Below, piece by piece: positions 5,971-59,778 of a DNA stretch of 64,000 bases. Below the pieces are notes generated by a model. It worked only from the letters and a program-made list of their open reading frames with translations. It was not told the origin of the DNA and made no database searches. How positions within the stretch are numbered: the first letter of the stretch is position 1; every line of letters begins with the position of its first letter. The position numbers were made by a program, and so were the translations under genes. The stretch comes from Chiloscyllium plagiosum. Taxonomy: Eukaryota. Location: contig NC_057737.1 of NCBI RefSeq assembly GCF_004010195.1, positions 13,442,748-13,506,747 of the forward strand, read 5' to 3'.

Positions 5971-6411
5971 GATTGTAACCTCAATGCCATTTTCCTGTCT
6001 ACCCCTACCTTTCACCCCTTGCTAAAATAGAATCTATCTCCCTCTGACTTAAAAAAATTCAAATGCTCTTCTTTTCTCCTCATTGTGAGGAAGAGAGTTC
6101 CAAAGGCTCATTATGCCAAGGCATTGCTAGGCTATAGCTCAAGTGATGGGAAATGGGATTATTTTTGACTGATACACATGCTATAGATCTCTATGACTCC
6201 ATGACCCTCCGAAAAAAAACTGCTCATTTCTATCTTAAAAAGGCAACTTTTATTTTTTTAAACAGTCATCCTAGTTCTTGATTCACCCATCCTTTCCACA
6301 TCTTCCCTATCAAGACCCCTCAGGATCTGAATTACAACATTTAAAAGACATCTGGATGGGTATATGAATAGGATGAGTCCTGAGGAATATGGTCCAAATG
6401 TTGGCAAATGG

Positions 6412-7027: not shown

Positions 7028-7759
7028 GTCTCTGTGCCTGTTGGCCAGCCATTTTAACACACAATCACATTGAGACACCTTTGAGTCTGAAGTTGCAAGA
7101 TGTGGAAATTCACACAAATAATTCCTTATAAATTGTAGGTCAGGGAATATTTAACGGAATCCCATCTTGTCAACATCTGAAAAGCAGGAGTTGCTATTTA
7201 TATTAACTCATTAACCTAATGAACTTACAAGGAGAGAGGCAGCTCCATGTCAATGAACAGAAAAAAGCATTTTAGAAAACTTCAGTTTGAGAAATATGCT
7301 ACTAGTCACATTGTTTGACTTCAGCTATAAAGAAGTCAAAACAGTACAATTTATGGCAGTGAGTAGACCCCTACATACAACAATGTCTGAATGAACAAGA
7401 GGATTATGCCTGGGTCACCAATGATGCGCTCAACACAAATCAATCCATTAGGGACCTCCTTCAGCAGACATGCTACTTTGTAGTTTAGATCACAGTGCAA
7501 ATCAGGAATGGAGGGGTTAGTATTCACAAATAGAAGGACTGATTTTAACTTCACCTGTGCAGGACATCCTGACTCACCTAGGAGAAATTGAGGACTCTCT
7601 CAGCCTCCTTGGGCCACCCCCCCCCCCATTCCTGATGAGGAGCTTATGCTCAAAACGCTGACTCTGCTGCTCCTTGGATGCTGCCTGACCGGCTGTGCTT
7701 TTCTAGCGCCACACTTTTTGACTCTAATCTCCAGCATCTGTGTCCTCACATTGTCCCAA

Positions 7760-33074: not shown

Positions 33075-33445
33075 GTTTACAAAATTATGAGGGGCATGGA
33101 TAGGATAAATAGACAAAGTCTTTTCCCTGGGGTGCGGGAGTCCAGAACTAGAGGGCATAGGTTTAGGGTGAGAAGGGAAAGATATAAAAGAGACCTAAGG
33201 GGCAACCTTTTCACACAGAGGGTGGTCCCTGTATGGAATGAGCTGCCAGAGGAAGTGGTGGAGGCTGGTACAACTGCAACATTTAAGAGGCATTTGGACG
33301 GGTATATGAATAGGAAGGGTTTGGAGGGATATGAGCCGGGTGCTGGCAGGTGGGACTAGATTGGGTTGGGATATCTGGTCGGTATGGACAGCTCAGACCG
33401 AACAATCTGTTTCTATGCTGTACAACTCTATGACTCTATGGCTCT
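33075..33445 (+). mobile_element. CR1 3' end
   Basis: Same family as 1-430. Confidence 0.9.
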
Positions 33446-33767
33446 GTCCTCCATTTCCACTGGTTCAAGCAGATGTAAAGCATCTACTTGAACGAGTGCA
33501 GTGAATTAATACTGTGTCTTGATCCACATTCCTCCCTCTGAGAACAGCATCAAAACGGATGAATCAGCCAATTGCCTTGCTTGCTCTGTGTCACGCACAG
33601 GTTCTCTGCAGCATTTGCTTGCACACTCAGCCCTTCAAAGTACCCGATAATTCATTGCTGCTGAGGTGTTTGCAAATGCTCCAAGGGACACGCTAAAAGT
33701 CCATATAAATAACAGCTTGTACTTTCCTTCCTTATCAGGACTTACATTGAATCCTCATTTACAGTGC

Positions 33768-33782
33768 TCAGTATGGCTTCTT
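33768..33782 (-). CDS. TAPBPL: Tapasin-family gene exon 8, coding part KKPY* (KKxx ER-retrieval motif)
   Basis: cttttatctcttcaacAG|AAG AAG CCA TAC TGA; donor GTAAGT 22 nt after the stop (exon end 33746). Confidence 0.8.
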   Translation of the reverse strand, partial: KKPY

Positions 33783-34389
33783 CTGTTGAAGAGATAAAAG
33801 GAAGAACATTAGACAACGCACTTCCATTTGGTGATAACACATTAACTTTGAGAGCTATTCTGAAAAGCTGAAAGGTAAGGGAATTTAAAAAAACATTGAA
33901 CCACATTTACTTTGACTAACAAGTTTAAATTGTTAATTAAACCTGAGCTGAACTTCAAACTCCACAAACTATGTCTATTAGTAACATCTCTGTTATCTAC
34001 TCCCACCTCAGCACAGTGAAAAAGTTGACCATTCCAAATTCAAAGGGTGTGATTATTCCCTCTATGGAGGTGGCAAGACATACAGGTTGGCCCTGGAGAA
34101 ATATTTGCCCCCTTTCTTGCAATTTCAACAGTTAAAGTTCGTGACTCAATACTCATTAAGGCCCTTATGGTCCATGAATATCGAGCTAAGGGCCTCAGTT
34201 CATCTCCAGCCTGAGTGCCTGCCTTCCTAGCAGGTGAGAAACGCAGCTGAGGGCTGAGGGCTTGAGAGGGGAAGCCTACATATGCCACACTTTTGGACCA
34301 TATAGGGGCAGGGATTAGAGATAAGGGAGAATGTGCCAAGGGACAAGAGGGGTACAATTATTCACAATTTCACAATGTTCAACACTATT

Positions 34390-34930
34390 AACAACTCCTT
34401 GAGCTACTGAGGCAGTCCATGTACAAATGCAGCAAGACCTGGACAACACTCACACATGGGCTGGTAAGTGGCAAGAAATATTCATGCCACACAAATTTCA
34501 GGCAATCTCCATCTCCAACAAGAGAGAGTGTAATCATCTCCCCTTGACATTTAATGGCATCATAAATACAGAATCCTCCACTCTCAACAAACTGAACTGT
34601 ACTTGCCATATAAATAATACAAGAGCAGGTCACAGGCTGGAAATTTTGGGACAATTCCTGACTGGCCAAAGCCTGCCCACTGTCTACAAGGTACAAGTCA
34701 GTAATGGAACACTCTCCACTTGCCAAGATGGCTGCAGTTCCATCAACCCTCAAGAAACTTGATATCATCCAGGACAATGAGTCTGTTTGGTTGACACTCC
34801 ATCTTCAATTTTTACTTCTTCCACCATGGCCAATCAGTGGCACCAGTGAATACCACCTAAAGACTCACTGCAGCAACTCACCAAGGCTCCTTTGATAGCA
34901 TCTTGCCACTTGTGACCTCTATCACCTAAC
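34390..34930 (+). mobile_element. Ancient CR1/L2-group LINE fragment
   Basis: MQQDLDN...WAGKWQ..F.P.K.QA; related pieces at 36800-37110, 38280-38640 and 49195-50115 (-). Confidence 0.7.
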
Positions 34931-35328
34931 CCAGTCTTGATACATTTGCTGACTATTCCCTATAGGGTAGTGAATTCCAAATGCAAAAGACCCTCAGAGA
35001 GAAGAAATGCCCTCACCTCCACTTTAAATCAGACAGCCCATATTTTGAAACTGGGCCTCATAATTCTAGATTCTCTCAGAAGGAGAAACATCCTCTCAGC
35101 ATCAGCCCTTTGGGCCATCTCTCTGTTTTAAAAATCCCATCGGTTTAGGCCCAACCTGTTTAACCTCTTTCTTATAGTCAGGGGGAATAAAAAAAAACAA
35201 TACAACTGCATTGTGAATATATCAAGTAATCTCTGCACATTAAATCTTACTAAAATTTTCCTCTCCTTGCACATTTTCATTGCAAAACTTTGTGGCTTTT
35301 ATTAAATTTTGAATTATATTGCTCTTAC

Positions 35329-35345
35329 CTTGTTTTTTTCTGCAA
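35329..35345 (-). CDS. TAPBPL: Tapasin-family gene exon 7, 17-nt cytoplasmic micro-exon (VAEKNK)
   Basis: ccttttatttacAG|TTGCAGAAAAAAACAAG|GTAAGA; phase 1 to 0 exactly bridges exons 6 and 8. Confidence 0.78.
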
Positions 35346-36065
35346 CTGTAAATAAAAGGATAGAAAACAATTAAAAATTCACAACCACATCATGTCATGA
35401 ACAGATAGAAAGTTAGTGCTGACACTACTTAAGAGATTGTGAAGGTTTTTAAGGGTAATTCAAGGGGGAAATCAACATTTGTCCTGCATGACAGGAGAAG
35501 TTGGTAAGTGCACTCTTATGGCTAATGGTGTTGCTGTATACTCAAATTTGCATACATTAATGCACATAGCCCTAATCTTTGCAGATAGAAATAGCTGTAT
35601 ATACGGACTATACCGATTTCAAATCAACATAACACATGACAACCATTTCCTGGTTCAACTCTGAAGGCAATGCCCTGACTAATCATAGCCAACCTGCCAA
35701 GTTTAAAATTTAAACAAAGCCTGGCTATTAAGTGTCAATTAGCATTACATACATGGATGCACACACCATGTCTTGGCAACACCTCGACCAATCAGAGTCT
35801 AGTTGCGGTCCAACTGCCAACCAATCAACACACTACTCTCATGCAGTATAAATGCTGGTTTTCTCATTTATGGATATTCTTCTGAAATGTCCTGAGGAGT
35901 ACAAGATGAAAAGCATTGACAAAAACCTGTCTTTTTTCAGCAAAGCTCAGCTCTGCAGTACCGAGTAAAGTTTAGCCCAGAGAGATGATGATTATTGTGG
36001 AAGTCGAGAGACTGTACAGCCAATGCTGACTAACAGTGCAGCATTGGTAATAGCAGAATACTAAC

Positions 36066-36158
36066 CTTTTTTCAAGTAAATCAGCAGCATGATCACAACA
36101 GCACAGATAAAGATGATCACAATTGATAGTAAGAGAAACTGAAGTGTCCGAGATTGTG
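36066..36158 (-). CDS. TAPBPL: Tapasin-family gene exon 6, transmembrane (AQSRTLQFLLLSIVIIFICAVVIMLLIYLKK)
   Basis: Acceptor ttccttcattccacAG, donor G|GTTAG; 93 nt, phase 1 to 1. About 23 hydrophobic residues followed by KK. Confidence 0.85.
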
Positions 36159-37404
36159 CTGTGGAATGAAGGAAACATTTAATCAGTGTCAGCATTTTCA
36201 GGCTTCTACGACAGGTCACTGTGTATGTTGTGAAGAGTTGTTACCCTGAAAGGAGAATTAGAAGAATGGGGTATCCTGGCCAACACTTATCCTTCAAACT
36301 AATACCACAAAACAGAACGCTCATTGTTAATGTTTCATTCAATATGTTTATTGGTAGAATTTAACTTATTTATTCAACTGCAAAGCTGTTCTAAATACAT
36401 CTTCACAGAGTTAACTTATTGGCCTTTCTACTCAATTTCAAAATTGTTTGATCATTAACAAATTAATGTTTATTTCCAAGGTCGTTTATGTTGATGCAAA
36501 ACAAGAGTCCAAGGAAAGGACCCTAAAATTTTCAACACAGTGTCCCCCTCTGTGCAACCCCTCTGACTTTGCGAACATTATACTGACTTTGTACTCTTTA
36601 ATTCAAATTATTTATTCAACCCCATGTCCAGTTCCCAGGTTTTATCCTAACTTTTGATGGTTTTGGTTTTGCTATATATCTTTCTTGTTGTAAATTTCCA
36701 ACAACTGTTTAAAAGTCCAGTTAATCGTTGTTGCAAGGAATTCCGTTGGTGTAATGCCCTCAGAGTAGTTCCTGACCTCATTATAGACTTGGCTCAAACA
36801 AGGACCAAAGAGCTGAACCCAAGAGTGAGAGTGACTCTACTGCTGTTGGCATCAAGACAGCAATAGAGCTGAGAATGGAATCTAGGAGCTCAGCAAAACT
36901 GAAGTAAATGGGAATCAGGGGCAAAGCTCTCTGCTGGTTAGAGTCGTATCTAGTACAAAGGAAGATGGTTGTAGTCGTTAGAAGTCAATCATCTCAGCCC
37001 CAGGACATTATTGTTGGAGTTCTTCACCGTAGTATTCTTGGCCCAACCATCTTCAGCTGCTTTATCAATTACCTTCCCTCCATCATAAGGCCAGAGTGGG
37101 AATATTGATGGTTTGAATGATCTACCCTTCCCTGTCAAAGGATCTCATGGTGATATTGACAATAGCCACGTTAAAATGTAGAACCCATAATGCCAAAACT
37201 AAGTAGCTAAAAGAGTCATTGCTGATGCAAATGGGGAATGAACTATGGAATAATGATATGCTTAATGTACAACAAATAGTAACAAAGTAATTGCAAGAAT
37301 ACTGATGATTACACAATGCTCTGCACAATTTACAACTCCTCAAAAAACTTAATTCTTGTCAATGATGTCCAGACCTTGTTACATAATCAGGCTTAGCTGC
37401 TAAG

Positions 37405-38273
37405 TAGAGTCATAGAGATGTACAGCATGGAAACAGACCCTTCAGTCCAACCCGTACATGTCGACCAGATAACCCAACCCAATCTAATCCCACCTGCCAG
37501 CACCTGGCCCATATCCCTCCAAACCCTTCCTATTCATATACCCATCCAAATGTCTCTTAAATGTTGCAATTGTACCTGCCTCCACCACTTCCTCTGGCAG
37601 CTCACTCCATACATGTACACTCTCTGCATGAAAATGTTGCCCCTTAGGTCTCTTTTATATCTTTCCCCTCTCGCCCTAAACCTATGCCCTCTAGTTCTGG
37701 ACTCCCCCACCCCAGGGAAAAGACTTTGCCTATTTATTCTATCCATGCCCCTCATAATTTTGTAAACCTCTATAAGGTCACCCCTCAGCCTCCAACGCTC
37801 CAGGGAAAACAGCCCCAGCCTGTTCAGCCTCTCCCTATAGATCAAATCCTCCAACCCTGGCAACATTCTTGTAAATCTTTTCTAAACCCTTTCAACTTTC
37901 ACAACATCTTTCTGATAGAAAGGAGACCAGAATTGCACACACTATTCCAACAGTGGCCTAACCAATGTCCTGTACAGCCGCAACATGACCTCCCAACTCC
38001 TATGCTCAATACTCTGATCAATAAAGGAAAGCATACCAAATGCCTTCTTCACTATCCTATCGACCTGCGAGTCCACTTTCAATGAGCTATGAACCTGCAC
38101 TCCAAGGTCTCTTTGTTCAGCAAACTCCCTAGGACCTTACCAATAAGTGTATAAGTCCTGCTAAGATTTGCTTTCCCAAAATGCAGCACCTCACATTTAT
38201 CTGAATTAAACTCCATCTGCCACTTCTCAGCCCATTGGCCCATCTGGTCCAGATCCGGTTGTAATCTGAGGTA
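37405..38273 (-). mobile_element. CR1 LINE 3' part in tapasin-family intron 5
   Basis: LPGLEDL.YRERLNRLGLFSLE and WQMEFNSDKC. Confidence 0.9.
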
Positions 38274-40715
38274 CAACACTATACATTTGTGCCATATAAC
38301 TGCCAGGCAATGACCATCGTTAAGAAAATAAAATCCAATTTGCTACCCCAAACTTCAAAGGCATTACATTCTCTGAATCTTCTATTATTAACAATCTAGG
38401 TGTTTTCACTGACTAGAAACTGAATTTGAATTCTGCTGAGAGTGAGTGACCACCTTATTCCTCAAAGTTTGTCAATCTACAAGGCATAATCAGGAGTGTA
38501 ATTGAGCGCTCTCCCCTTAGAGCTACAATGCTCAAAAAGCCCAACACCATTCAAGTCAAATCAGTCTGCTTACCTGGCACGCCATTAACCATCAACATTT
38601 TTTCCTTTCAACACTGATGCACAGCGGCAGCAGTGTTGTAATGAAAAGTGTATAACTTACATGCATTAACTTATGTTGAGAGTTTGTATCTCAAACTAGT
38701 GCCATATGTGTGTTTGTCCATTTTTGTGAAGGTGTTTTAAACGTTAACTTGGTCAGTCTTTCCAGAACTTTAAACTAGTATATGCCTCCCAGAGTGCGAA
38801 TGGAAATGTGGTTATATCGTGTGGGTTTGTGACCAGAGAGAGAAAACATTAAGCCACTAGCTTAGCAGAAACTAGGATAAGTGTTTTAAATTTAGTTCAA
38901 AAGCTTCTGGGGAGATGAAAGGAGATCTAACCAGAGTGAGAAACAGGTACAGCCCCTTCTAGAATGGGAGACTGTTCAAAGCAGTTAAGGAAATAAATTA
39001 CCTCAGTGAAAGGTGTAGTCTGTGAAACTTCCAGACCAAAAGTGTTTGATTATAACCCTCAGACTTTTATGATGCTGAGAAAGTCTAAGCTCTCAGTGGT
39101 ATCAATTGTCAAGTGAAAAGGTTTCACAGCTCATGGGACCAGAACTGAGAAGAAGCAGTTAAGTCAAACCTACAAATTCGATGGAGAAGGAATTTCTCTG
39201 GATCTTGTAAAGTGATGGTTTTGCGAAATAGCTAGGATTATGCTAACTGTGTGTTTTTATATTTTTCAAACTATGTTACATTTAAATAGCTTTGCTTGTC
39301 TTATTTTAATGTTATGCTTTTAGTGTAATAAATTTCTATTTTGTTGTTCATACTGAATCTGTAGCATTGTGCTTCAATGAAAGAAAGCCATATTAAAACA
39401 AAATATGATCCAATAAACCAGATTTTGTTCTTGGATCTGGGTTCTCCAATAGTAATACCAGCTCGCATCGTAACATGTGTAGCATCTGCAAGATATGCTG
39501 CCGCAACTCATTTGGATTCCTTCATTGGCACCTTGTATAAAACCTTAAGATATAGGCCATTAAGACCATTTAATCTCCTTCAACATTCAATGAGATCATG
39601 GCTAATCTGACAATTCCCAAATACACTTTCCTGCTTTTTCCCTACACACCACAATTCCCCTTCTGACTCAGCCTTGAATGTACTTAATGACACAACCTGA
39701 TGCAAAGTACTCATTCACCTCCACTACCATTTCCTGGTTCCTCATTATTATTTCACCAACATCATTCTCTGAGGAGTCTACATTCTCTTTTTCTTGCTTT
39801 TTATATATTGAAGAAAGTCCTTACTGTCCTTTTTAAATTACTTGCTAGTGTACCCACGAAGTTTATTTTCTCCCTTTTTGAGTCATATTTTGATGGTTTT
39901 TAAAACTTCCTAATACTCTGGGTTATCACTAATCTCTGTAGCATTGTACATTTGTTTCTTTCAATTTGATGCTATCCTTAACTTCCTACCACAGGGTCTC
40001 ACCAAGGATAGTTCTTAGGAGGCTGGTTTGCCTGGCAAAGGCAGAATGGTCCATTATGAGGAAAAGAGTCAAAGATTGACCTATGCTTCCCTGTCAGAGG
40101 ATCTGACAGTGACATTGGCTTTAGCCATCTTAGAATATGGAGCTCAATATGCCAAAACTAAGCAGGCTAAAGGAGCTCTTGCTGATGCAAATGGGGCATA
40201 AACTATGGAAGAATACATGCTGATCGCACAACAAAAAGTAACAAAGTATTTGCAAGAACTTTTCTTACAATTGGTTTAACATTCTCCACAATATCTGCAC
40301 AAGGTACAAAGTATTATAAAAGCTTAGTAAAAACCTGGACATTATGGAAAGTAACTACGATGGGCCATCTGCATTCCATTGGAGAGAAACGTATCAATGT
40401 GTGCAGATTTCCCAGCTTCGCTCAGCTCCTTTTTCCCAACTGAAACAGATTTTGAGAAAACAAGAGTGTATGACAGACAGAAAACTGATACAAAGGGTGG
40501 ACCTTTGGGATGTCTAAATGAATGGATCAGATTGATTTCAAAACTTATGATAGGTGAATTAATAGATATTTTCACTGAACTGGTGCAACTTCTACAGAAA
40601 TCTGAGAGACTCAATGAAAGTCATGAAAAGCCATGGCATCCAATTTTAATGCAAATTGAAAGTTTTACCATGAACAATTAAAAGCAAGTACCACAGGACT
40701 CTGTTCATTGCTTAC

Positions 40716-41042
40716 CTTCTACACTCACTTGGATGTAGCGTTTGATTGGTTTGTCTACACTGGCATGCTCAACTCGACATGTATACGTAACACCGTTGTC
40801 CTTGAGGGACGCTGTGAACCGGAAAAAACTGGTCACGTTGTAGGTGCCATCCATGTTCCGCTTGTGGGGTGAGAAGATGACATTGGTCATGTAAACGGGC
40901 AGCATGTGCCTCTCACCCTTCTGCCGCAGCCACTTCACCTCTACATCAAGTGGATAATACCGCCCTGCGTCACAGACCAGCTTTTGTTCATCCCCTTCTA
41001 TAAGGGAAACCGAATTGGGGTACACTGAGACAATGGGCGACT
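40716..41042 (-). CDS. TAPBPL: Tapasin-family gene exon 5, IgC1 domain
   Basis: 327 nt, phase 1 to 1. LVCDAGRYYPLDVEVKW...DGTYNVTS...YTCRVEHAS is a C1-set signature. Confidence 0.93.
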
Positions 41043-41799
41043 CTACAAAATAAGCAAACATACTGTATTGCAACTTCACAACAACTGAACACACATTCAA
41101 GTTTTACAGGTGATCTTTAACACTTAGGATTTTCAGCTTTCCATCCATTTAATTAGAATAACATTGAGAACACAACAAGTAACCAAGAAATATCTTTTTT
41201 TAAAATCATACAGCCTTTGACAGTAATATTTGCTGTACAATCATGTTACACTGTTAACACACTATGTCAAAAGTTGGTGAAACAGCTTGTATTTGATGGA
41301 AAATTATGATGACAGCAGCAGGGCACAGATAACAACATCCATCTGTGAAGCCTCAGCATTTGCTCAGTTTACAGTACAGGACAACAATAACCCTGCACTG
41401 CTTCCCCAAGCCTACACTGCTAAATTTGGTTCACTTGTCTCTACAGCAGAATCTCAACCCAGGCCCATATCCAAACACAGAGAATGCTGGAGAAACTCAG
41501 CAGGTGGACACACAGCATCTGAGGAGAGGGGAATTGAGTTAACACTTTGCTTTGCTGGTACAAATCTGAACAACTTACACTCGACATTTCTACCTGATCA
41601 GAAAATGCACCTGGCTATAGGTTGGAATAATTAATCCAGGTGCAATTTCTGGAGGAACAACTTCAGCTTTATTCAGGAGGCAGTAAGGTGAAAATGATCC
41701 TTCTGCTGACTCCTGCACTGTTCTGTTACCAAATTAATACATTTCCACCGTCATCTGTTCATTTCAACTCTAGCTAATTTATGTGATTGACAATCTTAC

Positions 41800-42138
41800 C
41801 CATAATCTCCACCTCGATGGTGTGAGTTCCAAAGAGTGGAGGCACATATACAGAGCAAAGATAGGATCCCTCATCTTTAATGCCAATGTTTCTTAGGAGG
41901 AGTGAAGCATTTCCCTGCTTGATCTGGTCCATGAATAATTCAACTCCTTTCTCAATGTATTCAACCCGCTGATGTCGCCCATTGTAGGCGAACAATTTCT
42001 TCTTATTCCCTTTGTGCTGATATCGCCAGTCAATGTTAAAGTCGGTGCTGTGATCAATCTTGTAGCCACAGTCCAGAACAAGGTCTTGCTTCAATTTGGT
42101 TCTGATCAATGGGGTCCTGGTGTGCACAATATAGGCCA
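41800..42138 (-). CDS. TAPBPL: Tapasin-family gene exon 4, IgV domain
   Basis: 339 nt, phase 1 to 1. V.TRTP...L...LDCG...WRYQHKG...GNASLLL....DEGSYLCSV is a tapasin-type V-set signature. Confidence 0.93.
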
Positions 42139-42425
42139 CTAACAAATTTAAAAAAAAAGTCATTACCATCCATTTTTGTAACAGTTAAATCACTACATAC
42201 AACTCAGCCAAAACTATTTGAAACTGTACTTTCCCTCAAGTTCAGCATCTTAAATATGTGGTTGGAAGTTGTTTATGTTACATCGATGTTTCATCTCTTG
42301 CGTTATTATTGAAATTGACAGAGTTTTAATAGGCTTATGAGAAACAAATATTGCCCACATCCCACACACATTCTTGCAGCACTCACTCTGAACATGCACT
42401 TACCTGGTCAACATTCAAATATTAC

Positions 42426-42716
42426 CTTGAACAAACAGAGTGTCAGTGTCAGCGATGACTAAATCTTCATCATCAGGTTTTGCTTCACTTTTCTTAACCT
42501 TCTGGCTATCGGGCTCTTCTATCTTCCTCATGAAGCTGGTTACAGTGAATCTGCTAGGTGAATGTCTTAAAGTCACTGTGAACCATACGTCCTCAATGGT
42601 CTCCTTACCCTGGTGTGGCCAGGGCTCATGGATGCCATGAGTAGAATACCGACTAATTTCACATCCCACTGTGTCCAGTTTCTCGTCCGCATATTGGAAA
42701 ATATCTAATGAAGATT
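42426..42716 (-). CDS. TAPBPL: Tapasin-family gene exon 3, N-terminal domain (ESSLDIFQY...VGCEISRYSTHGIHEPWP...WFTVTL...DTLFVQ)
   Basis: 291 nt, phase 1 to 1, canonical AG/GT. CEISRY..W....WF motif of the tapasin family. Confidence 0.88.
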
Positions 42717-42994
42717 CTGTTAAAAAAACGATTGATTCACATAATAATTAACAGCAAGTTATTAGAAATGGATGCAAATCAGAGAAAAGTCTCAATACAA
42801 ATGAAGCAGAGTTTGCTGTTCCTCCCACATTGTAAGATCCTAGAAACCTTTCTGAGTATATTGAATTTAGAAATTGAAAATATACATACTTTTCATAGAC
42901 TAAATTCAGGGAGCTGAAGAACCTGTAGACCTGAGAGTCCCAAAAGATGTCTTCCAACTAAACACTGAATATGCTGTCTAACTTTTGATTGAAA

Positions 42995-43345
42995 TAGAGT
43001 CAAGATTAGAGTGGTGCTGGAAAAGCACAGCAGGTCAGGCAGCATCCAAGGAGCAGGAAAATCAATGTTTCGGGCAGGAGCCCTTCATCAGGAATGGGGC
43101 TGAGAGCCTCCAGGGTGGAGAGATAAATGTAAGGGGGGGGGGGGAAGGGGCTGAGGAGAAGGTAGCTAAGAGTACAATAGGTGGAATGGAGGTGGGGAAA
43201 AAGGTGATAGGTCGGAGAGGAGGGTGGAGCGGATAGGTGGGAAGGAAGATTGGCAGGTAGGACAGGTCATGAGGATGGTGCTGAGCTGCAAGGTTGGAAC
43301 TGGGGTAAGGTGAGGGAGGTGAAATGAGGAAATTGTGAAGTGAAG
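42995..43345 (-). mobile_element. Penelope-like pLTR fragment
   Basis: Reverse complement of 32070-32378-like sequence. Confidence 0.75.
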
Positions 43346-44039
43346 TCCAGTGAAGTCCACTTTTTGATTGAAACAGGTCAACCTTCTTGAGTCAGCTAAC
43401 CCTGTCACGTTACCATTTCAGAAGTTGTGCAGAATTTTTTCCTCCAACAATGGACTCTTGTTAATACCTTTTCCTCCAAGAAACAGAAAGAAATGCATTT
43501 ATTTAGCACCTTTCACAAGCTCAGGATATCTCCAAGAGTTTTTAAACCAAGGAATTACATTTGACAAGTAATCATTGTAGTAATATAAGAAATGCAGAAG
43601 CCAATTTAAGCACAGCAACCTGCCCAGGTATACTCCCAAAACTTCACTTTATTGGAAGACTCAGTAAATGAATTGCTTCACTATGTTAAGCTCCATATGC
43701 ACCAAATTGAACTGGGGTGTGTGCAAGATTGTTCGTTCTTTCACACTGTGTACTCTGACATGGCAATTCACATAACCTATGGCTGACGTTAATCCGAAAT
43801 GATTGCATCAATTTTATACTCTATTGGATTACAATCAAAAGACCATGCACAAAGTCTCTCCTAAACTCCATGTTAATTGTATGTCAATTATGTTCAATCA
43901 CTTGTGGTCTTAAAACAGTACCTGTTTGAAGTTGAGCACTTTAGTGAGAGGAGGCCTTCCTCAATATTCCTCCCCTAACCAGAAGGCATCAAACCCTTGG
44001 TGGCACCAATTGTCCTCCCTTGCTTAAATGTGCGTGTGA

Positions 44040-44248
44040 TGCGTGTGTGGAATGGGCTGCCAGAGGATGTGGTGTAGTACAATTGCAACATTTAAAAGGC
44101 ATTTGGATGGGAATATGAATAGGAAGGGTTTGGAGGGATATGGGCTGGGTGCTGGCAGGTGGGACTAGATTGGGTTGGGATATTTGGTCGGCATGGACGA
44201 GTTGGACTGAAGAGTCTGTTTCCATGCTGTACATCTCTATGACTCTAT
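44040..44248 (+). mobile_element. CR1 3' end
   Basis: Same 3' UTR and tail as 200-430. Confidence 0.85.
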
Positions 44249-44294
44249 ATGCAGGTGAATGGCATTCTTTGAGGCTTCACTTGATTGCACAGAA

Positions 44295-44680
44295 GGGGAC
44301 CCTACGTTCAGTGATAACTTACCTAGACTTAGGGGCCCAGGGTCAAGTCCCACCTGTTCCAAAGGTGTGTAATAACATCTCTGAGCAGGTTGATTAGGAA
44401 AAATAGATTTAATTTTAACAAATTACAAAGTCGATCACTTGTGGTACAGTTGTACTGTCCCTGAATTTGAGGCAGGAATCCTAGGTTGAAGTCCCATCTA
44501 CTCCAGAGGTATGTGACAACATCTCTGAACAAGTTGATTCAAAAATATAATTGAGTGCACATAGGGTCACTGTGTTACAGTGACAGTGTCCCTCTTGCTT
44601 GGTAGGAACGCATAGGTTAAAGTCCCACCTGCTTCAGAGGTGTGTTATAGCATCTCTGAGCAGGTTAATCAGAAAATATC
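44295..44680 (+). repeat. Three tandem copies (about 130 bp each) of a short tRNA-like SINE
   Basis: Repeated aagtcccacctg.tccagaggtgtgt.ataacatctctga.caggttgatt; related copies at 23690-23785 and 24040-24125 on -. Confidence 0.7.
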
Positions 44681-45361
44681 TTGAGCACACTTTAAAAGAC
44701 ACTGACTGAAACTGCTGCAGGACACAGAAACATAAAACTTAGGAACAGGAGTTTGCTATCTGATTCTTCAAGCCTGTTCAACCACTCAATAAAGACCAGG
44801 ATTGAGGTGATTCTGGTCCTTTTAAAGTATTGCCTTCACTGGCCATGCGTCACCCTATGAGTTTTCTTGCTCAGCTTCAGATCCTGGATTCATTTAGTGT
44901 TGTACAATTAAAGAGATACATACTGAAATTTAGCTAGACAGTAATTTGTCTTGAGGATATTTTTGACTGAGCTTGTCTGCTGGGAAACTGTAGGATCATA
45001 TGGAACATCTGTTCAAATCTTTGGCCAATATTATTCACCAGCAACTTAAAATAAAATCAGGCTGAATATAAAACCAGTGTTGCGCTTAAGTCTATTAATT
45101 TCCCAATAGGGGTTGATGGGTGTTACAAATCACCCTTCATGTGTTTTACAGCATTTATTACTCCTTTCCTTAGATATCAGTGGATTGTTTGAATTATTAT
45201 GAGCAATGCCATTGGAGATCTGCTACCCTAACAAAATAAACAATGCAGGACTTTAATACAAGTAATTTAGGGAGCATTAAAGCATTTCCATGCTGTTTTA
45301 CTCTGTGTACAGTAGGGGGCACGCCTGAGAGTATTGATTTGAGGATATGTTTCATCTTTAC

Positions 45362-45541
45362 CTTGAACTTTAAAAATAATGGCCTCCTCATTCGTAATGA
45401 TATCACCAAATAGTAGGTTCGCCTTCCTCTTGATGGTCTTTGGCCCAAACATATCAGCCCCTTCATTTTGTTTTTGTTCCACAAACACGCAGTCCAACTT
45501 TCTGCCTGGAATCCTTTGGCCATTCTGTGCCTGCACGATTC
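45362..45541 (-). CDS. TAPBPL: Tapasin-family gene exon 2 (GIVQAQNGQRIPGRKLDCVFVEQKQNEGADMFGPKTIKRKANLLFGDIITNEEAIIFKVQ)
   Basis: tttttaAG acceptor, G|GTAAAG donor; 180 nt, phase 1 to 1. LDC.FV(E) start typical of the tapasin/TAPBPR N-domain. Confidence 0.85.
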
Positions 45542-45991
45542 CTTAAAAATCCAGAGAAACAGCTAAAAAATAAAATTTTAACACCACTACACAAAATACC
45601 CAGGCACCTCAATAAACAAATCTTGTCACACTGATTCTCATCATATAAATTAATCTCACAGTGGCCTATGCGTTCAAAGTTCAAAAACATACAGTAAACT
45701 AAAAGTTGAACATTTCGTCCATTCGTAACAAGATCAATTTGCCATTTGATCAAAAGATTGTAGAACGCGAGAATATTAGCTAGGATTTTGCCCTCCTCCT
45801 AAAGTTTTCATTAGTGGGCTTCATTCTGAAGCCTACTCGCTTTACATGGTGCAGATTCTTTGTGAGTCCTGAAATTAAAGTAGTCTTAAATCCAAGTGTA
45901 CATGCACATTGCTGTTATATTACTTAATTGACTACAGTCAAACTAGCCTCAACCCTAATACGAAGTTAAGTATAAATAGATCTCTTTATTT

Positions 45992-47290
45992 CATAGAAGC
46001 ATAGGAGCAGGAGAAGGCCATTCAGCCCTATGAGCCTGCTCACTCATTAATTACGACCATGGCTGATCGTCCAACTTAATAGCCTAATCCTGCTTTCTCC
46101 CCATAACCTTTGACCCCATTCACCCCAAGTGCCAAATCTAGCTGTGCCTCTTGAATACATTCAGTGTTTTGGCATCAACTACTTCCTGTGGTAATGAATT
46201 CCACAGGCTCACTGCTCTTTGGGTGAAGAAACGGCTCCTCATCTCCACCCTGAATCCTTAGATTGTAACCCCTGGATCTGGACACACCCACCTTTGGGAA
46301 CATTCTCCCTGCATCTACCCTGTCTAGTCTGGTTAAAATTTTACAAATCTCTATGAGATTCCCCCACCCGTCTGAATTCCAGCGAGAACAATCCTAACCC
46401 AGTCAATCTCTCCTCATACATCAGTCCTGCCATCCCTGGAATCAGCCTGGTAAACCTTTGCTGCACTCCCTCGAGTAATAGCATCCTTCCTCAAAAAACG
46501 AGACCAGAACTGCACACCATATTCTCGGTGTGGCCTCACCAAGGCCCTGTATAAGTGCAACAACACATCCCTGCTCCTGTACTCAAAACTTCTCACAAAG
46601 AAGGCTAACATACCATTTGCCTTCTTTACTACCTGCTGCACCTGCATACCTACCTTCAGCGACTGGAGCACAAGGACACCCAGGTCCCGCTGCACACTCC
46701 CCTCTAACAGTTTGTACCCATTCAGGTAGCCATCTGCCTTCTTGCTTTTACTTCCAAAGAGAATAAACTCACACTTATCCAAATTATACTGCATCTGCCA
46801 TTGATTTGCCCAGATCATCCCGAAAGACCACTGCATCCTCGTCACAGTTCACCTTCTCTCCCAACTTAGTACCATCTACAAACTTTGAGATGTTACATGT
46901 TGTTCCCTCATCCAAGTCACCAATATATATTGTGAATAGCTGGGGTCCTAGCACTGATCCCTGTGGCACCTCACTAGTTTCGATTAGCTTAGATTCCCTA
47001 CAGTGTGGAAATAGGCCCTTCGGCCCAACCAGTCCACACCGACCCTCCGAAGAGTAACCCACCCAGATCCATTTCCCTCTGACTAATGCACCTAACACTA
47101 CGGGCAATTTAGCATGGCCAATTCACCTGACTTGCACATCTTTGGACTGTGGGAGGAAACCGGAGCACCCCAAGGCTGAAATCGAACCTTGGACCCTGGT
47201 GCTGTGAGGCAGCAGTGCTAGTCACTAAGCTCCAGTTACTACCTGCTGATTTGAAAAGGACCCATTAATTCCTACTCTTGGTTTCCGCGG
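45992..47290 (-). mobile_element. Degenerate CR1 with a nested HE1 SINE
   Basis: VPQGSVLGPQLFTIYI, KFVDGTKLG, LYRALVRPH. Confidence 0.85.
46982..47230 (-). mobile_element. HE1-type SINE
   Basis: Reverse complement of the other copies. Confidence 0.85.
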
Positions 47291-47654
47291 AATTTCAAAT
47301 CCAGTTGTAGGTTTCAAAGGCTTTCAACCAGACTGCACACCACTCTGTCCACTCAATTCAGTTCACAGGCCCACAGATAACCCTTAAGTAAAACCCTCAG
47401 ATTTCTGTAAACAACTCAGGCGGTGCCTTTTTCTCTGCTTAGGTTAGTTACGCACTCTCAGGCTCCAGTCTAATCAAACTAGAGTAGATTAAGATAGAGG
47501 TATAGAGCCTAAACATGCATTAACATGACTACATGGTAAAAAGGGGAGGGGTCACAAAAGCCATTTTATTCACCCCTCATTGACATTGTGAGCCAATGGT
47601 TTTCATCTCAGACTGACACGTTCACTGAAGACTATTCTGCAGATATCACCAACA

Positions 47655-48072
47655 GCCTCCTTCACCGCTGCTCTCTCACCACCAGACGCCTGGAGGAAGA
47701 ACATCTCATCTTCCGCCTCGGAACACTTCAACCCCAGGGCATCAATGTGGACTTCAACAGTTTCCTCATTTCCCCTTCCCCCACCTCACCCTAGTTCCAA
47801 ACTTCCAGCTCAGCACTGTCCCCATGACTTCACTGCTCCTCGAATGCTGCCTGAACTGCTGAGCTCTTCCAGCATCACTAATCCAGAATCTGGTTTCCAG
47901 CATCTGCAGTCATTGTTTTTACCACGGATTTGTCCTACCTGCCTATCTCCTATTCCACTGCACCCTCTCCTCCCTGACCTATCACCTTCATCCCCTCCCC
48001 CACTCACCTATTGTACTCTATGCTACCTTCTCCCCACCCCCACCCTCCTCTAGCTTATCTCTCCAAACCACT
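47655..48072 (+). mobile_element. Penelope-like fragment in tapasin-family intron 1
   Basis: TRRLEEEHLIFRLGTLQPQGINVDF; nested pLTR piece at about 47831-47922. Confidence 0.8.
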
Positions 48073-48157
48073 GCCGATTGCGGAACACAAATGCAAATCA
48101 TGACAATATTAAAACACGCTCTGCCTCTTTTATCCTGGACGCGTCCGACCTTCTTAC

Positions 48158-48203
48158 CAGCAGCAAAGATACAAAAATGCAACAGGAACATTTCCAGATA
48201 CAT
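48158..48203 (-). CDS. TAPBPL: Tapasin-family gene exon 1, signal peptide (MYLEMFLLHFCIFAA)
   Basis: ATG at 48203, donor G|GTAAGA; 46 nt, phase 1. Joins exon 2 to give a signal peptide ending ...FAAGIVQA. CpG-rich surroundings. Confidence 0.8.
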
Positions 48204-48234: not shown

Positions 48235-48251
48235 ACTTTCGGTTTCGATTT
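48235..48251 (-). promoter_or_regulatory. ISRE / IRF element upstream of the tapasin-family ATG
   Basis: Minus strand reads AAATCGAAACCGAAAGT, a perfect GAAANNGAAAGT core plus a third partial repeat, about 32 bp 5' of the ATG. Confidence 0.75.
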
Positions 48252-56413: not shown

Positions 56414-56881
56414 TCACTTGCTTCGATTCGCCTGATTCTTTTGTGTAGCTTCTTCAGCTTTACTTTGTCTCCACTCACAAATGTCAGCAAAGTCACAAGA
56501 CCGACATTTCCATGCCTCCTCAATATCCACACCCTTGGCCTCCCTCTGGCCCCTCCAGAAGGAGTAATAATGCTTTAGCTCACTTTTAACCCACTCCTCT
56601 TCAAAGTTGACCTCTTTTGTTCCAATTAGAGAGGCATCTGCTTGGTAACAGTATTCTATTTTCATGGCGTCAATATTGGGGATCTCTGCATATCTCAGGT
56701 TTAACAATATTAAATCCAGAAGGTCACCGAATGCGCTTATGGTAAATCCCACCTTCTGAGCATGCAACAGAATCTCTGAACTAAACGGCTGCTCCGTCCT
56801 TAAGCAAAGATGGTGAGTGATAGTGTCCTTGTTCAGTTGGCCTTTTATCATAGCCTCAAAGAGAAGTTTGTATATATTAAC
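56414..56881 (-). CDS. EXO5: EXO5 last coding exon (VNIYKLLFEAM…EEAWKCRSCDFADICEW…RSK*)
   Basis: 468 nt, phase 0; Q...Y motif across the junction and C-terminal CxxCxxxxxC Fe-S ligands. Confidence 0.92.
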   Translation of the reverse strand, partial: VNIYKLLFEAMIKGQLNKDTITHHLCLRTEQPFSSEILLHAQKVGFTISAFGDLLDLILLNLRYAEIPNIDAMKIEYCYQADASLIGTKEVNFEEEWVKSELKHYYSFWRGQREAKGVDIEEAWKCRSCDFADICEWRQSKAEEATQKNQANRSK

Positions 56882-57935
56882 CTGGTAATAAAAAAGGGGA
56901 CTTAGTTTTACGAAATGATCGATACAGAGCCAATATCACTTCAATAAAATGTTAACATTTCCACATATGCTGCCAGACTGGAGTTTCTTCACAAATTTCT
57001 CTTTTTGTTTGTTTCAGATTTCTAGCATCTACAGTTCTTTATTTCACTTCAATATATCTTTGCTATTCATTTCACACACCAGAAGTCTTCACTTGTTCCC
57101 TGGTTGTGCAGTGTATTTCTTTTTTTAAACCTTTGGAATCCATGTACAAAATGACATGAGAGTAACCTATAACTTCTTCCCAATTGGAATGTTGTGACAG
57201 CATGTTTAATTGCTGGTTGGGATCACAAAACACAACAACACTAGAAAATTTAATACTGGCATTTAAACAGTGGGCTTTCTCATTGAAGAATTTCCCCTTT
57301 TAAGAATGCTAGAACTGTTCTGTGCAAAGCCACCAACAGCCACTGTGCTGCAGCAGTGGCCCACAAATATTAATGAGAAATTGGTTGAGGGAGGGATATT
57401 GATCAGTCAGACAAAATGGTACAGTATTCTGAATCAGGCAGCTATCACATTCAGTGTCTATAATTACAGGATTAAAAGCCAGCAAATGGTAGAAAAAAAC
57501 AAGGGATTTTCCAATTGATTTCTGTAGTTGGAGAGAAACCGAACTTCACTTCCAATATATGCACAGTGTAGATATGAGTTAACAGCCAATTATTGTTAAA
57601 TGACTTGATACTTAAATTCAAGTCCAACCAGTAACTAATCAATCAACATGAAACCCTGCAATTCCTGACTGATGCTTTATCAAACTGCACTGAATCACAG
57701 AGAAATACAGTGGGAGTAACAAGACTTTGTAACTAGAGATGACAAGACAAAAGTTGTATGGAAAAGTTATTTTTTTTTAAGGATTTAACAACATTTTCTA
57801 TAAATTCTATAATAAAGAATTTTATAGTTTTAGAATATGATATGTTTACAAGAGAATTAAATCAGATAAACATGAGGTTGAAGGTCTTGTGAGCCAATGA
57901 AAACAGATCCTTTTCAAATTTTTGCCCCCACTTAC

Positions 57936-58108
57936 TTGTAACTGATGACTCTTCCTTTGAGCTACACTGGGATATGTTCGCTGACCACGAGTTTTCAGTT
58001 CATGCAATTCCAGTTCACCTTTGGAATTATAGCACAGCTCATCAACAACACCAACAAGGAAAATCCCCTCCAGCTCTCCAAACACTGGCAGCTCTCGGAC
58101 ACGCTCTC
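57936..58108 (-). CDS. EXO5: EXO5 exon with nuclease motifs ([25 protein letters not shown]…ELKTR…HQLQ)
   Basis: 173 nt, phase 1 to 0; PD-(D/E)XK-type G.VDEL and ELKTR. Confidence 0.92.
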
Positions 58109-58462
58109 CTATTCAATACACAACCAAATTACTTGGTTAGAATACAGCTGAGTGGACAGCCTCAATGATATTCACTACTCCTGCAGATGGTTATAAATTT
58201 GAGTCCTATGTTGACAATTACTCAAACCCGACTCTCTTTCAGCTAGATAGTTTTCAGCTGATTACATAGATGGTGCAGCTCACCATGATGAGGCTTGTTA
58301 TATTCTGAAGAGGCAAATTTTTAAAAACCTATCCAGCATGGTTAGAAAAACTGGATGACGCTGTGGAAAATGCTACAAAACAAAAGCAAATTATTTTGTA
58401 GCATAAACGATGAAAGAAGTTTCCTACCTTTAAGGCAAATACCTGACAATGTTTTTATATAC

Positions 58463-58567
58463 CTGCTTGCAAGAACTGGATCATTGAGAGAAGATTAAGT
58501 ATCTTCACAGCCCAGCTATCTTCTCGGCTCTCTACTTTTATTGGGACAATATCTTGGACCTCCAATT
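58463..58567 (-). CDS. EXO5: EXO5 exon ([35 protein letters not shown])
   Basis: 105 nt, phase 1 to 1; ELE....V.V..REDxWA.K.LN motif. Confidence 0.9.
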
Positions 58568-59512
58568 CTAAAACAGAAGCAGAAATAACCTTACTCACAC
58601 TTGCCCTTTAACAACCACAGCAGAACTGCAGTGTGAATTCGGATGGACGGACAGACGGAGAGGGAAGTTAAGACTGCCACTAAACTTTTGAAAAATATTG
58701 ACTTTTGAAGAAAGACATTTCAATCCCAGCTGACTTTGTTCATCAATGAAGCAGCACTGGTTCTTAAATTAATGTCAGGAGTAGTGATTAAATTAAATCT
58801 CAAGATCAGCCTTGTGTCTGCCAAGGCAGTAGTTTAATAAAAACAGCAGGTAAATGGGGCTCATTCAGAAGCAGAAAATCCACTTTTGATTCCTCCTTTA
58901 TTCATGTTAGATCAAAGAAAATATGAAGAATAGACATGACACACAGTTCCAACTTCTGATCATTACTTGGTGTCCCTACTGAAAAATGTCTGCTTTATAA
59001 AATTATTTAATAGGAAATAGTAATTGCTGGCAAGGTCAGAATTTGTTGCCCATCCCCAGTTGCCCCTGTACAGAGTGGCTTGTGCGGCCATTTGTGCAAG
59101 TAGTTAAGAGTCATCACATTACTGACAGTCTGGATTCTTATGTGAGCCAGACCAGGTAAGAACAGTAGATTGCCAGATTTTTTTTTATGACAATCAATCA
59201 GTCACCATTACTGAGACAGACGTAGAAATTGGATTTAGATTCCACCAGCTGCCATGGTGGAATAATCCCCAAAGCATTAGCCTGTACCTCTGGGTTACGA
59301 GTGTAATGACATCACAACTACACTATCTCCCCCTACATATGTAGATAGGATGAGACTTGGTTGTGATGCAGCTCAGAACTAAATAACAAGCCAAAGTTTG
59401 GAAGCAAACATATTCACAAATGAGGTGACTACGGACCCTAAGCACTGACTAATGCTGGGACAAACAACTTGATGCTGGGACTAGCAATGTTCATTTCAGT
59501 CTAAAAGGTTAC

Positions 59513-59778
59513 CTCTTGCCAGGTGTAGACAGCTACCAGCTTTCACAACTGGAACTTCTTCTCGCAGTTGTTCAATGTGTGGCAGTTCTAGACCATAAAC
59601 CACTTGCTGCTCGCACCAAGCCTGTCGACTCAGGTCAGTGACATTCAGGTACCTTCGACCAAAGCGCTCCAGCGGGATCCTTTCATCCTGCTTTTTCCGT
59701 TTACTGCCACTGCCCTCAGGTCGCACGTCGCTTTTCTGTTCAGACACATTTAGCTGATTGGAGGATTGCTTGTTTCCA
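59513..59778 (-). CDS. EXO5: EXO5 exon (…PLERFGRRYLNVTDLSRQAWCEQQVVYG…VKAGSCLHLAR)
   Basis: L.VTDL..Q.WCEQQ (first Fe-S cysteine) and G..LHLARE motifs; 266 nt, phase 2 to 1. Confidence 0.9.

What the first reader, a model, noticed from the sequence alone, without database searches (positions are those of the whole stretch)
33768..48203. Complete tapasin-family paralog outside an MHC context, mixing tapasin and TAPBPR traits
Seen: 8 phase-consistent exons (46+180+291+339+327+93+17+15 = 1308 nt, 435 aa). The ectodomain has only six Cys, consistent with three disulfides. The TM (LQFLLLSIVIIFICAVVIMLLIYL) has no charged residue and the tail ends in KKPY. Known: tapasin uses Cys95 to bind ERp57, a TM lysine to bind TAP and a KKxx motif to stay in the ER; TAPBPR has an extra Cys (C94, UGGT1 link) and no KKxx. 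The neighbours here are EXO5 and RAP1GAP2-like, not MHC genes or CD27/VAMP1. Inference: this belongs to the poorly studied third tapasin lineage of non-mammalian vertebrates (not human TAPBPL/TAPBPR), possibly an ER-retained MHC-I chaperone independent of TAP and ERp57.
Basis: partly seen in the sequence, partly recalled or inferred. Interest (0 to 1): 0.8.

Follow-up and report, generated by a model that had tools for sequence, protein, structure and literature searches.

The report
Shark third-lineage tapasin-like gene
This is an intact, transcribed shark copy of the little-studied third member of the tapasin family of MHC class I helper proteins, a gene already annotated in related sharks and described in bony vertebrates, whose function is still untested.

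Summary
A minus-strand gene of 8 exons (46+180+291+339+327+93+17+15 nt, 435 codons) lies at 33768-48203. Its exon translations tile the 435-aa 'tapasin-related protein' of Chiloscyllium punctatum end to end, with 413 of 429 whole-codon residues and 6 of 6 split codons identical. Transcript contigs from three studies join the TM exon, the 17-nt micro-exon and the KKPY exon.

Four per-exon trees and a full-length tree of 47 homologues place it in the third tapasin-family lineage (Grimholt 2018, 'TAPBP-like'). That lineage is separate from tapasin and from TAPBPR, and cartilaginous fish have all three.

A folded near-identical orthologue matches solved TAPBPR and tapasin over all three lumenal domains. 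The lineage keeps a C-terminal K(X)KPY dilysine end (23 of 24 proteins) and an uncharged TM (23 of 23). In fishes it also keeps the acidic-W-R-x-Q motif, recalled as MHC-I-contacting.

The best reading is an ER-recycled MHC class I chaperone that does not dock on TAP. This is inferred, not shown. The ERp57 argument is weak. EXO5 is confirmed as a neighbour; RAP1GAP2-like is not. The gene is a further member of a known kind, and interest is modest.

The parts
48158..48203 (-). Exon 1: start codon and signal peptide (MYLEMFLLHFCIFAA plus 1 base), donor GTAAGA
   Evidence: 14 of 15 residues are identical to P0181 residues 1-15.
45362..45541 (-). Exon 2 (180 nt): end of the signal peptide, first N-domain strand with the first Cys (KLDC), and the editing-loop region KQNEGADMFGPKTIK
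   Evidence: Sequence, translation. 56 of 59 residues are identical to P0181 17-75. A same-phase acceptor at 45505 (144 nt) was considered and rejected.
42426..42716 (-). Exon 3 (291 nt): rest of the N-terminal domain with the second Cys (GCEISRY) and an acidic low-confidence linker
   Evidence: 92 of 96 residues are identical to P0181 77-172. It has no PDB sequence hit on its own but is covered by the family profile against TAPBPR and by the fold match.
41800..42138 (-). Exon 4 (339 nt): IgV-type domain with DWRYQ and the NAS sequon
   Evidence: Pfam V-set 1.3e-11. TAPBPR 5opi_C E 2.6e-9. 110 of 112 residues are identical to P0181 (110 of 111 aligned plus one mismatched first residue). Tree.
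40716..41042 (-). Exon 5 (327 nt): IgC1 domain, with an NVT sequon
   Evidence: Pfam C1-set 6.9e-13. TAPBPR 3.6e-12. 105 of 108 residues are identical to P0181. Tree.
36066..36158 (-). Exon 6 (93 nt): connecting peptide and an uncharged transmembrane helix, ending in KK
   Evidence: Contig pieces of X2 and X8 lie on 36066-36160. 27 of 30 residues are identical to P0181.
35329..35345 (-). Exon 7: 17-nt micro-exon (V)AEKNK
   Evidence: It has the best splice sites among the 17-nt candidates. Its first 15 letters stand between the two sides of the 36066/33784 joint in X1, X2 and X8.
33768..33782 (-). Exon 8 coding part: KKPY plus stop, a C-terminal dilysine-type end; the 3' UTR continues below
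   Evidence: joint. K(X)KPY is conserved in 23 of 24 third-lineage proteins.
33444..33767 (-). Start of the 3' UTR (it runs on into a repeat and the N gap)
   Evidence: Contig pieces X8 33444-33775, X1 33543-33700 and X2 33483-33633.
48235..48246 (-). ISRE-like motif GAAACCGAAAGT, 32-43 nt upstream of the ATG (weak evidence)
   Evidence: 2 matches in the window against 0.59 expected, and 12 of 100 shuffles reach 2.
56414..59747 (-). Neighbouring gene EXO5 (at least three coding exons), upstream and in the same orientation
   Evidence: Pfam Exo5 5.3e-22, 1.1e-7 and 0.011.

Best explanation
The gene is the orthologue, in a carpet-shark-like genome, of the third tapasin-family lineage. This is the 'TAPBP-like' gene of Grimholt 2018, not human TAPBPL/TAPBPR and not tapasin.

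It encodes a type I membrane glycoprotein with these parts: a signal peptide; an N-terminal barrel domain fused to an IgV domain; an IgC1 domain; an uncharged TM helix; and a 12-residue tail ending in KKPY.

The most likely mechanism has four steps.
1. The lumenal part binds MHC class I/beta2-microglobulin the way tapasin and TAPBPR do. The IgV-face D-W-R-x-Q motif would contact the alpha2 side, the IgC1 domain would contact alpha3/beta2m, and a loop with a hydrophobic M/F tip would sit over the F-pocket end.
2. It thereby stabilises or edits peptide-receptive class I molecules.
3. The K(X)KXX end returns the protein from the cis-Golgi to the ER through COPI.
4. With no basic TM residue, it does not dock on TAP and so acts outside the peptide-loading complex.

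Shown here: gene structure, transcription and splicing of the tail exons, lineage membership, fold, and conservation of the motifs. Inferred: class I binding, ER residence, and independence from TAP. My confidence in lineage identity is about 0.97; in the mechanism about 0.5.
For: - Exons tile P0181 at 413/429 residues plus 6/6 split codons.
- Spliced contigs from 3 studies carry E6-E7-E8.
- Per-exon trees are; the full-length tree gives 100/100 for each lineage.
- The family profile hits human TAPBPR at E 5.3e-46 and human tapasin at 3.5e-17.
- The AF2 model of P0181 has pLDDT 84.2. It matches TAPBPR 5opi_C (E 1.5e-26, 391 columns) and tapasin 9rcv_B and 3f8u_D (406-427 columns). The next-best hits, B7-H6, cover only about 215 columns.
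- Motif counts: dilysine end in 23/24 third-lineage proteins against 1/16 TAPBPR; charged residue in the TM core in 0/23 against 6/7 tapasins; the acidic-W-R-x-Q motif is present in the window and in 17/24.
- A hydrophobic residue sits at the column of the TAPBPR lever (L30 function from PMC6307860, passages).
- Salmon third-lineage genes rise log2 1.5-3.0 after interferon-gamma (PMC7573153, passages).
Against: - No binding, localisation or expression-level data exist for this lineage in any species. PMC7573153 and PMC9372762 (passages) say the function is unknown.
- The invariant PY after the lysines suggests a constraint beyond a generic KKxx signal.
- All 32 tetrapod members examined have lost the Arg-centred motif, so class I binding is not guaranteed across the lineage.
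- The ISRE-like site is not statistically distinctive.
- The structure was predicted for the 96%-identical orthologue, not for the window's own spliced product.
Confidence: 0.6

Rival explanations
1. It is the shark orthologue of TAPBPR (the human TAPBPL gene), merely divergent.
For: Taken singly, the IgV and IgC1 exons hit human TAPBPR and not human tapasin among the best 60 PDB sequences. The family profile is much closer to TAPBPR (5.3e-46) than to tapasin (3.5e-17). NCBI names many orthologues 'tapasin-related protein(-like)'.
Against: - Sharks have a separate TAPBPR (P0130, P0199-P0201), which groups with bony-fish and mammalian TAPBPR at 100/100.
- The window exons never fall there.
- The HADC cysteine present in the 15 TAPBPR rows that cover that column is absent.
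- A dilysine end is present here and in only 1/16 TAPBPR.
Confidence: 0.02
2. It is a cell-surface or secreted B7-like immune regulator, not an ER chaperone.
For: The V-C1 exons resemble B7-H6 and B7-H3 as strongly as they resemble TAPBPR in single-exon PDB searches. Human TAPBPL protein has been reported as a T-cell co-inhibitor (PMC8103088, abstract only). Reading through the exon 5 donor would give a TM-less product ending GKQ, as in the whale-shark model P0184.
Against: The N-terminal domain makes the whole ectodomain match tapasin and TAPBPR over about 390-430 columns, whereas B7 proteins match about 215. The K(X)KPY end is kept in 23/24 members. The transcripts laid carry the TM and tail exons.
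Confidence: 0.12
3. It is an ER chaperone of the tapasin fold, but its client is not classical MHC class I. The client could be a non-classical class I lineage or another MHC-fold molecule.
For: - The lineage sits apart from tapasin in the genome: EXO5 is next door and no MHC gene is in the window.
- The scan's MHC-type notes for this genome all lie on other pieces (unchecked notes).
- The lineage was lost in placentals (PMC5824609, passages), and its contact motif was remodelled in all 32 tetrapod members examined. That is the pattern expected if it tracks a particular client.
Against: There is no direct evidence for any client. The contact motif in sharks is the same as in tapasin and TAPBPR.
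Confidence: 0.2

Closest known systems
Third tapasin-family lineage ('TAPBP-like/TAPBPL' of Grimholt 2018, BMC Evol Biol 18:25; NCBI 'tapasin-related protein-like')
   Same: It falls in the same clade in every tree. It shares the domain order, the uncharged TM and the K(X)KPY end. It is 96% identical to the Chiloscyllium punctatum model.
   Different: The paper listed bony vertebrates only (passages read); this is a cartilaginous-fish member. Sharks lack the extra 'WFTC' cysteine of sturgeon and teleost members, and they keep the D/E-W-R-x-Q motif that tetrapod members lack.
Tapasin (TAPBP)
   Same: It shares the three-domain fold, the N-domain cysteine pair, the IgV sequon column, the acidic-W-R-x-Q motif and a C-terminal dilysine-type end. 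The eight-exon, phase-1 layout of tapasin is recalled.
   Different: It is a separate clade at 100/100. It has no basic residue in the TM, against 6/7 tapasins. It has no Cys in the Cys95 column, and no MHC genes are seen beside it.
TAPBPR (product of the human TAPBPL gene)
   Same: It is the closest solved relative by sequence profile (E 5.3e-46) and by fold (5opi_C). It shares the uncharged TM and a loop with a hydrophobic tip at the lever column.
   Different: It is a separate clade. It lacks the HADC cysteine linked to UGT1 binding (PMC5441866, passages). It has a dilysine end, which 15/16 TAPBPR lack.

Membership tests
Tapasin family in general | Lumenal architecture: N-terminal barrel fused to an IgV-type domain, then IgC1, TM and a short tail | tested here: met
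   Pfam V-set and C1-set on exons 4 and 5. The AF2 model of the 96%-identical orthologue matches TAPBPR and tapasin over 391-427 columns, N-domain included.
Tapasin family in general | Conserved N-domain cysteine pair plus the two Ig-domain pairs | tested here: met
   There are six ectodomain Cys at the conserved columns. Disulfide formation itself was not tested.
Tapasin family in general | IgV-face acidic-W-R-x-Q motif (the MHC-I contact role is recalled from mutant studies, not read here) | tested here: met
   The window has DWRYQ. The motif is present in 7/7 tapasins, 16/16 TAPBPR and 17/24 third-lineage rows.
Third lineage (TAPBP-like) | Groups with third-lineage proteins to the exclusion of TAPBP and TAPBPR | tested here: met
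   Per-exon trees: E4 97/94, E5 96/94, E3 75/88, E2 99/98 for the opposite side. Full-length tree with the orthologue as stand-in: 100/100.
Third lineage (TAPBP-like) | Uncharged TM and a C-terminal K(X)KPY | tested here: met
   The window reads ...LLIYLKK/VAEKNK/KKPY. Across the lineage the counts are 0/23 and 23/24. The tail exons are seen in transcripts.
Third lineage (TAPBP-like) | Conserved genomic neighbourhood | not testable with these tools
The only data are EXO5 adjacency in this window and the chicken orthologue's source name 'XIAP-associated factor 1 isoform X14', which is a lead.
Tapasin (TAPBP) | Clade membership | tested here: not met
Tapasin (TAPBP) | Basic residue inside the TM helix (TAP docking) | tested here: not met
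   None in the window or in 23/23 third-lineage TMs, against 6/7 tapasins.
Tapasin (TAPBP) | Free cysteine for ERp57 (human Cys95) | tested here: not met
   There is no Cys in that column. However, only 2 of 7 tapasins in the set have one, so the feature defines tetrapod-type tapasin only (PMC5824609, passages).
TAPBPR | Clade membership | tested here: not met
TAPBPR | Unpaired cysteine in the HADC motif (human C94) | tested here: not met
   It is absent in the window and in all 24 third-lineage rows, and present in the 15 TAPBPR rows that cover the column.
ER-resident dilysine membrane proteins | Lys at -3 and at -4 or -5 from the C-terminus of a type I membrane protein | tested here: met
   The KKPY end is seen. 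COPI binding and ER residence were not tested.

The most novel reading that the evidence does not exclude
The third lineage is an ancient, TAP-independent, COPI-recycled editor that arose with tapasin and TAPBPR before the split of cartilaginous and bony vertebrates. It serves a particular set of MHC-fold clients. Its class-I-contact motif was rebuilt at the origin of tetrapods (0 of 32 tetrapod members keep it), and the gene then disappeared in placentals together with, or because of, changes in those clients. Its invariant KPY end would then be a dedicated sorting signal and not a generic KKxx.
Probability: 0.15. Interest if true: 0.7.

Novelty: new member of a known kind. Interest (0 to 1): 0.3.

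Why it matters
Two of the three tapasin-family lineages are well-studied peptide editors. The third has no known function in any species.

The shark gene shows that all three lineages predate the split of cartilaginous and bony vertebrates. It also shows that the ancestral third-lineage protein combined tapasin-like ER retrieval with a TAPBPR-like, TAP-free membrane anchor. This gives a clean, intact, expressed template for localisation, class I binding and peptide-exchange tests.

It does not change current understanding. The lineage is in print, and NCBI already annotates the gene in related species.

Tried and rejected
1. A 144-nt version of exon 2 (acceptor at 45505, same phase). I rejected it for three reasons. 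The 12 extra residues of the 180-nt version (IVQAQNGQRIPG) are present in P0181 and conserved in other shark and ray orthologues. The 45541 acceptor has the better pyrimidine tract. The contig positions cannot tell the two versions apart.

2. PDB sequence searches with exons 2 and 3 alone gave 0 hits and 3 irrelevant hits. The N-domain relationship had to come from the family profile and the fold.

3. RAP1GAP2-like neighbour. 219 repeat-poor ORFs below 33 kb were listed. I picked 8 of them by eye, and 0 of 8 had a Pfam match. This stays unverified.

5. Raw-read run X20 laid 0 reads, so it is no test. Strand, transcript ends and expression level therefore remain unknown.

6. The ISRE-like site is not distinctive by count.

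7. N-terminal extensions of the long bird and ray models (P0242, P0256, P0250, P0179) and the chicken protein named after XAF1 carry no non-Ig Pfam domain.

8. Literature searches found no paper describing the third lineage in cartilaginous fish. The 'tapbpl' of PMC10751288 is described there as tapasin-related protein on the chromosome-12 paralogon (passages). Supplementary files, which hold Grimholt's alignment and Verissimo's gene maps, were not opened and may bear on this.

Full report
WHAT IS THERE

The region holds a minus-strand gene. Open reading frames for an IgV-type and an IgC1-type domain, a tapasin-like N-domain piece and a TM segment were visible at once. Reading the minus strand gave canonical AG/GT boundaries for these exons:
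- E1 48203-48158 (46 nt)
- E3 42716-42426 (291 nt)
- E4 42138-41800 (339 nt)
- E5 41042-40716 (327 nt)
- E6 36158-36066 (93 nt)
- E8 33782-33768 (15 nt, KKPY plus stop)

Exon 2 has two same-phase acceptors.

A scan of intron 6 for exons of the required phase found 183 stop-free candidates. The one with a pyrimidine tract, CAG acceptor and GTAAGA donor is the 17-nt exon 35345-35329. Introns 1-6 are phase 1 and intron 7 is phase 0.

IS IT REAL?

Pfam finds V-set (1.3e-11) on exon 4 and C1-set (6.9e-13) on exon 5, and nothing on exons 2, 3 or 6.

An all-against-library phmmer search with exon 4 gave 762 hits at E<=0.001. Many were multi-Ig proteins, but there was also a series of single-stretch hits of 400-470 aa. 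I fetched 32 of the 150 listed. A subset of them end in K(K/R/P)KPY.

Source names identify these as 'tapasin-like' or 'tapasin-related protein-like' of a skate, lungfish, sturgeon, caecilian, frog and wombat. A word-index search with the full-length skate protein P0151 returned 63 proteins. Among them are orthologues in 14 named chondrichthyan species, plus separate shark TAPBPR-type and sawfish and chimaera tapasin-type proteins.

The window's exons tile the 435-aa Chiloscyllium punctatum protein P0181 from residue 1 to 435. Identities by exon are E1 14/15, E2 56/59, E3 92/96, E4 110/112 (110 of 111 aligned plus one mismatched first residue), E5 105/108, E6 27/30, E7 5/5 and E8 4/4. That is 413 of 429, and the six split codons give the six residues that P0181 has at those places.

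TRANSCRIPTS

Run search with 40700-42720 listed five contig sets holding 0.44 of the sampled words. That is about the exonic share of the stretch, 957 of 2021 nt. DNA-like sets of the same organism label held about 0.8.

I laid X1, X2, X8 and raw-read run X20 on 33075-39074. In each of X1, X2 and X8 (three studies), one contig joins 36066 to 33784 with 15 letters in between. Those letters are the reverse complement of the first 15 letters of the 17-nt exon 7. The last two letters (AG) coincide with the end of the intron, so the aligner placed them there.

Depth is present over E6 and E8 and is zero over 33875-34274 in all three runs. The library kind of these sets is a guess by the tool; the GT..AG-bounded skips are what mark them as spliced RNA. 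X20 laid no read, so it is no test.

Junctions E1-E5 were not covered by reads. They rest on the orthologous models.

WHICH LINEAGE?

I aligned 47 homologues: 24 third-lineage, 7 tapasin-type and 16 TAPBPR-type. Labels came from source names where given. For 11 unnamed rows they came from tail and TM features, which is partly circular. I had dropped partial models, multi-Ig hits and near-duplicates beforehand. Each exon was added as a fragment, and one tree was built per exon on its own columns.

- The window exon is always sister to P0181: 99/99, 100/99, 100/99 and 100/90.
- The branch that sets the 24 third-lineage rows plus the window apart has 97/94 in E4 and 96/94 in E5.
- In E3 that branch has 75/88, with a long-branch warning for the other two groups.
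- In E2 (77 columns only) the 23 tapasin and TAPBPR rows split off at 99/98, but the rest is unresolved.

A full-length tree of the 47 homologues (443 columns, the window itself not included) gives each lineage 100/100 and the 11 chondrichthyan third-lineage rows 100/99. Within the lineage the order follows the species tree. The trees are unrooted, so they do not say which two lineages are sisters. Cartilaginous fish have all three lineages, so the split predates crown jawed vertebrates.

FOLD AND MOTIFS

A profile of 24 third-lineage proteins hits human TAPBPR at E 5.3e-46 over profile positions 77-391 and human tapasin at 3.5e-17 over 170-433.

AlphaFold2 on P0181 with that alignment gave mean pLDDT 84.2 and pTM 0.72. 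Foldseek ranks TAPBPR (5opi_C, E 1.5e-26, 391 columns) and tapasin (9rcv_B, 3f8u_D; 406-427 columns) first. B7-H6 follows with about 215 columns.

Counts on the 47-row alignment:

| Feature | Third lineage | Tapasin | TAPBPR |
|---|---|---|---|
| Lys at -3 and at -4 or -5 from the C-terminus | 23/24 | 5/7 | 1/16 |
| Charged residue in the TM core | 0/23 | 6/7 | 1/15 |
| Acidic-W-R-x-Q motif | 17/24 | 7/7 | 16/16 |
| N-x-S/T at the GNAS column | 17/24 | 6/7 | 11/16 |

- The window has KKPY, an uncharged TM, DWRYQ and NAS.
- The HADC cysteine stands in the 15 TAPBPR rows that cover the column and in no third-lineage row.
- A Cys in the human-Cys95 column stands in only 2 of 7 tapasins.
- Between the first two strands the window has KQNEGADMFGPKTIK, with M/F at the column where TAPBPR and fish tapasins have F or L. 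The role of that leucine in human TAPBPR is from PMC6307860 (passages).

WHAT IS KNOWN

- Grimholt 2018 (PMC5824609, passages read) named this lineage TAPBPL in salmon, zebrafish, medaka, gar, frog, turtle, chicken, kiwi and opossum. The paper noted the missing TM lysine and an ER signal in some members, and called the function unclear.
- Grimholt 2020 (PMC7573153, passages) shows interferon-gamma induction of the three salmon genes (log2 1.5-3.0).
- Kaufman's reviews (PMC9586880 and PMC9372762, passages) list three family members in many non-mammalian vertebrates and say nothing is known of their interactions.
- Three searches found no paper on this lineage in cartilaginous fish.
- The 'tapbpl' of PMC10751288 is the tapasin-related protein gene of the chromosome-12 paralogon (passages).
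- Supplements were not seen.

NEIGHBOURHOOD

EXO5 lies about 8 kb upstream on the same strand. No MHC gene was seen in the window's ORFs. The scan's MHC-type notes for this genome are all on other pieces (unchecked notes). RAP1GAP2-like was not verified.

VERDICT

The function, an ER-recycled and TAP-independent class I chaperone, is a reasonable inference that remains untested. The ERp57 part of the argument is weak. This is a further member of a known, annotated, functionally uncharacterised kind.

Noticed in passing
related proteins; window 41800-42138 for the shark state: All 32 tetrapod third-lineage proteins examined (turtles, birds, frogs, a caecilian, a wombat) lack the acidic-W-R-x-Q motif, and the central Arg is replaced in every one. 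Sharks, coelacanth, lungfish, sturgeon and most teleosts keep it. 20 of the 32 still end in K-x-K-P-Y.
   Followed up: partly
window 40705-40716 (minus strand, just past the exon 5 donor): Reading through the exon 5 donor gives G-K-Q-stop, a TM-less product. The whale-shark model P0184 (397 aa) ends exactly so. No read evidence was available for this place.
   Followed up: no
protein P0257: The chicken orthologue is named 'XIAP-associated factor 1 isoform X14' by its source. This suggests that the gene shares a locus with XAF1 in chicken. No XAF1-type domain is in the protein.
   Followed up: partly
window 48235-48246 (minus strand): An ISRE-like GAAACCGAAAGT lies 32-43 nt upstream of the start codon. 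There are only 2 matches in the window, but 12 of 100 shuffles do as well. If the 2830-nt contig of X2 is full length, the site lies inside the 5' UTR.
   Followed up: partly
window 37275-38274 and 33075-33474: This is a high-copy interspersed repeat, with summed contig depth of 10^4-10^5 in all three contig runs and many chimeric joints. It overlaps the stretch that another first-stage note (s1-883912) reads as alternative terminal exons. No contig among those listed joined it to the gene's exons.
   Followed up: partly
window 36123, 36126, 36127: The X8 contig differs from the window at three places in the TM exon, whereas X1 and X2 agree with the window. This is allelic or between-species variation in the TM segment, as also seen between the window and P0181.
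   Followed up: no
window 56414-59747 (minus strand): EXO5 is split into at least three coding exons here. The C-terminal exon carries the Cys cluster (CRSCDFADIC).
   Followed up: partly
alignment A1: Sturgeon and teleost third-lineage proteins carry an extra cysteine in 'WFTC', the 'unique cysteine' of Grimholt 2018. Sharks, rays, chimaera, coelacanth, lungfish and tetrapods do not, so it is an actinopterygian trait and not a lineage trait.
   Followed up: yes
window 6389-7057, 9048-9796, 14349-15702, 46414-47107 and others: Reverse-transcriptase-like ORFs of LINE-type repeats lie on both strands, some inside introns 1 and 2 of the gene.
   Followed up: no
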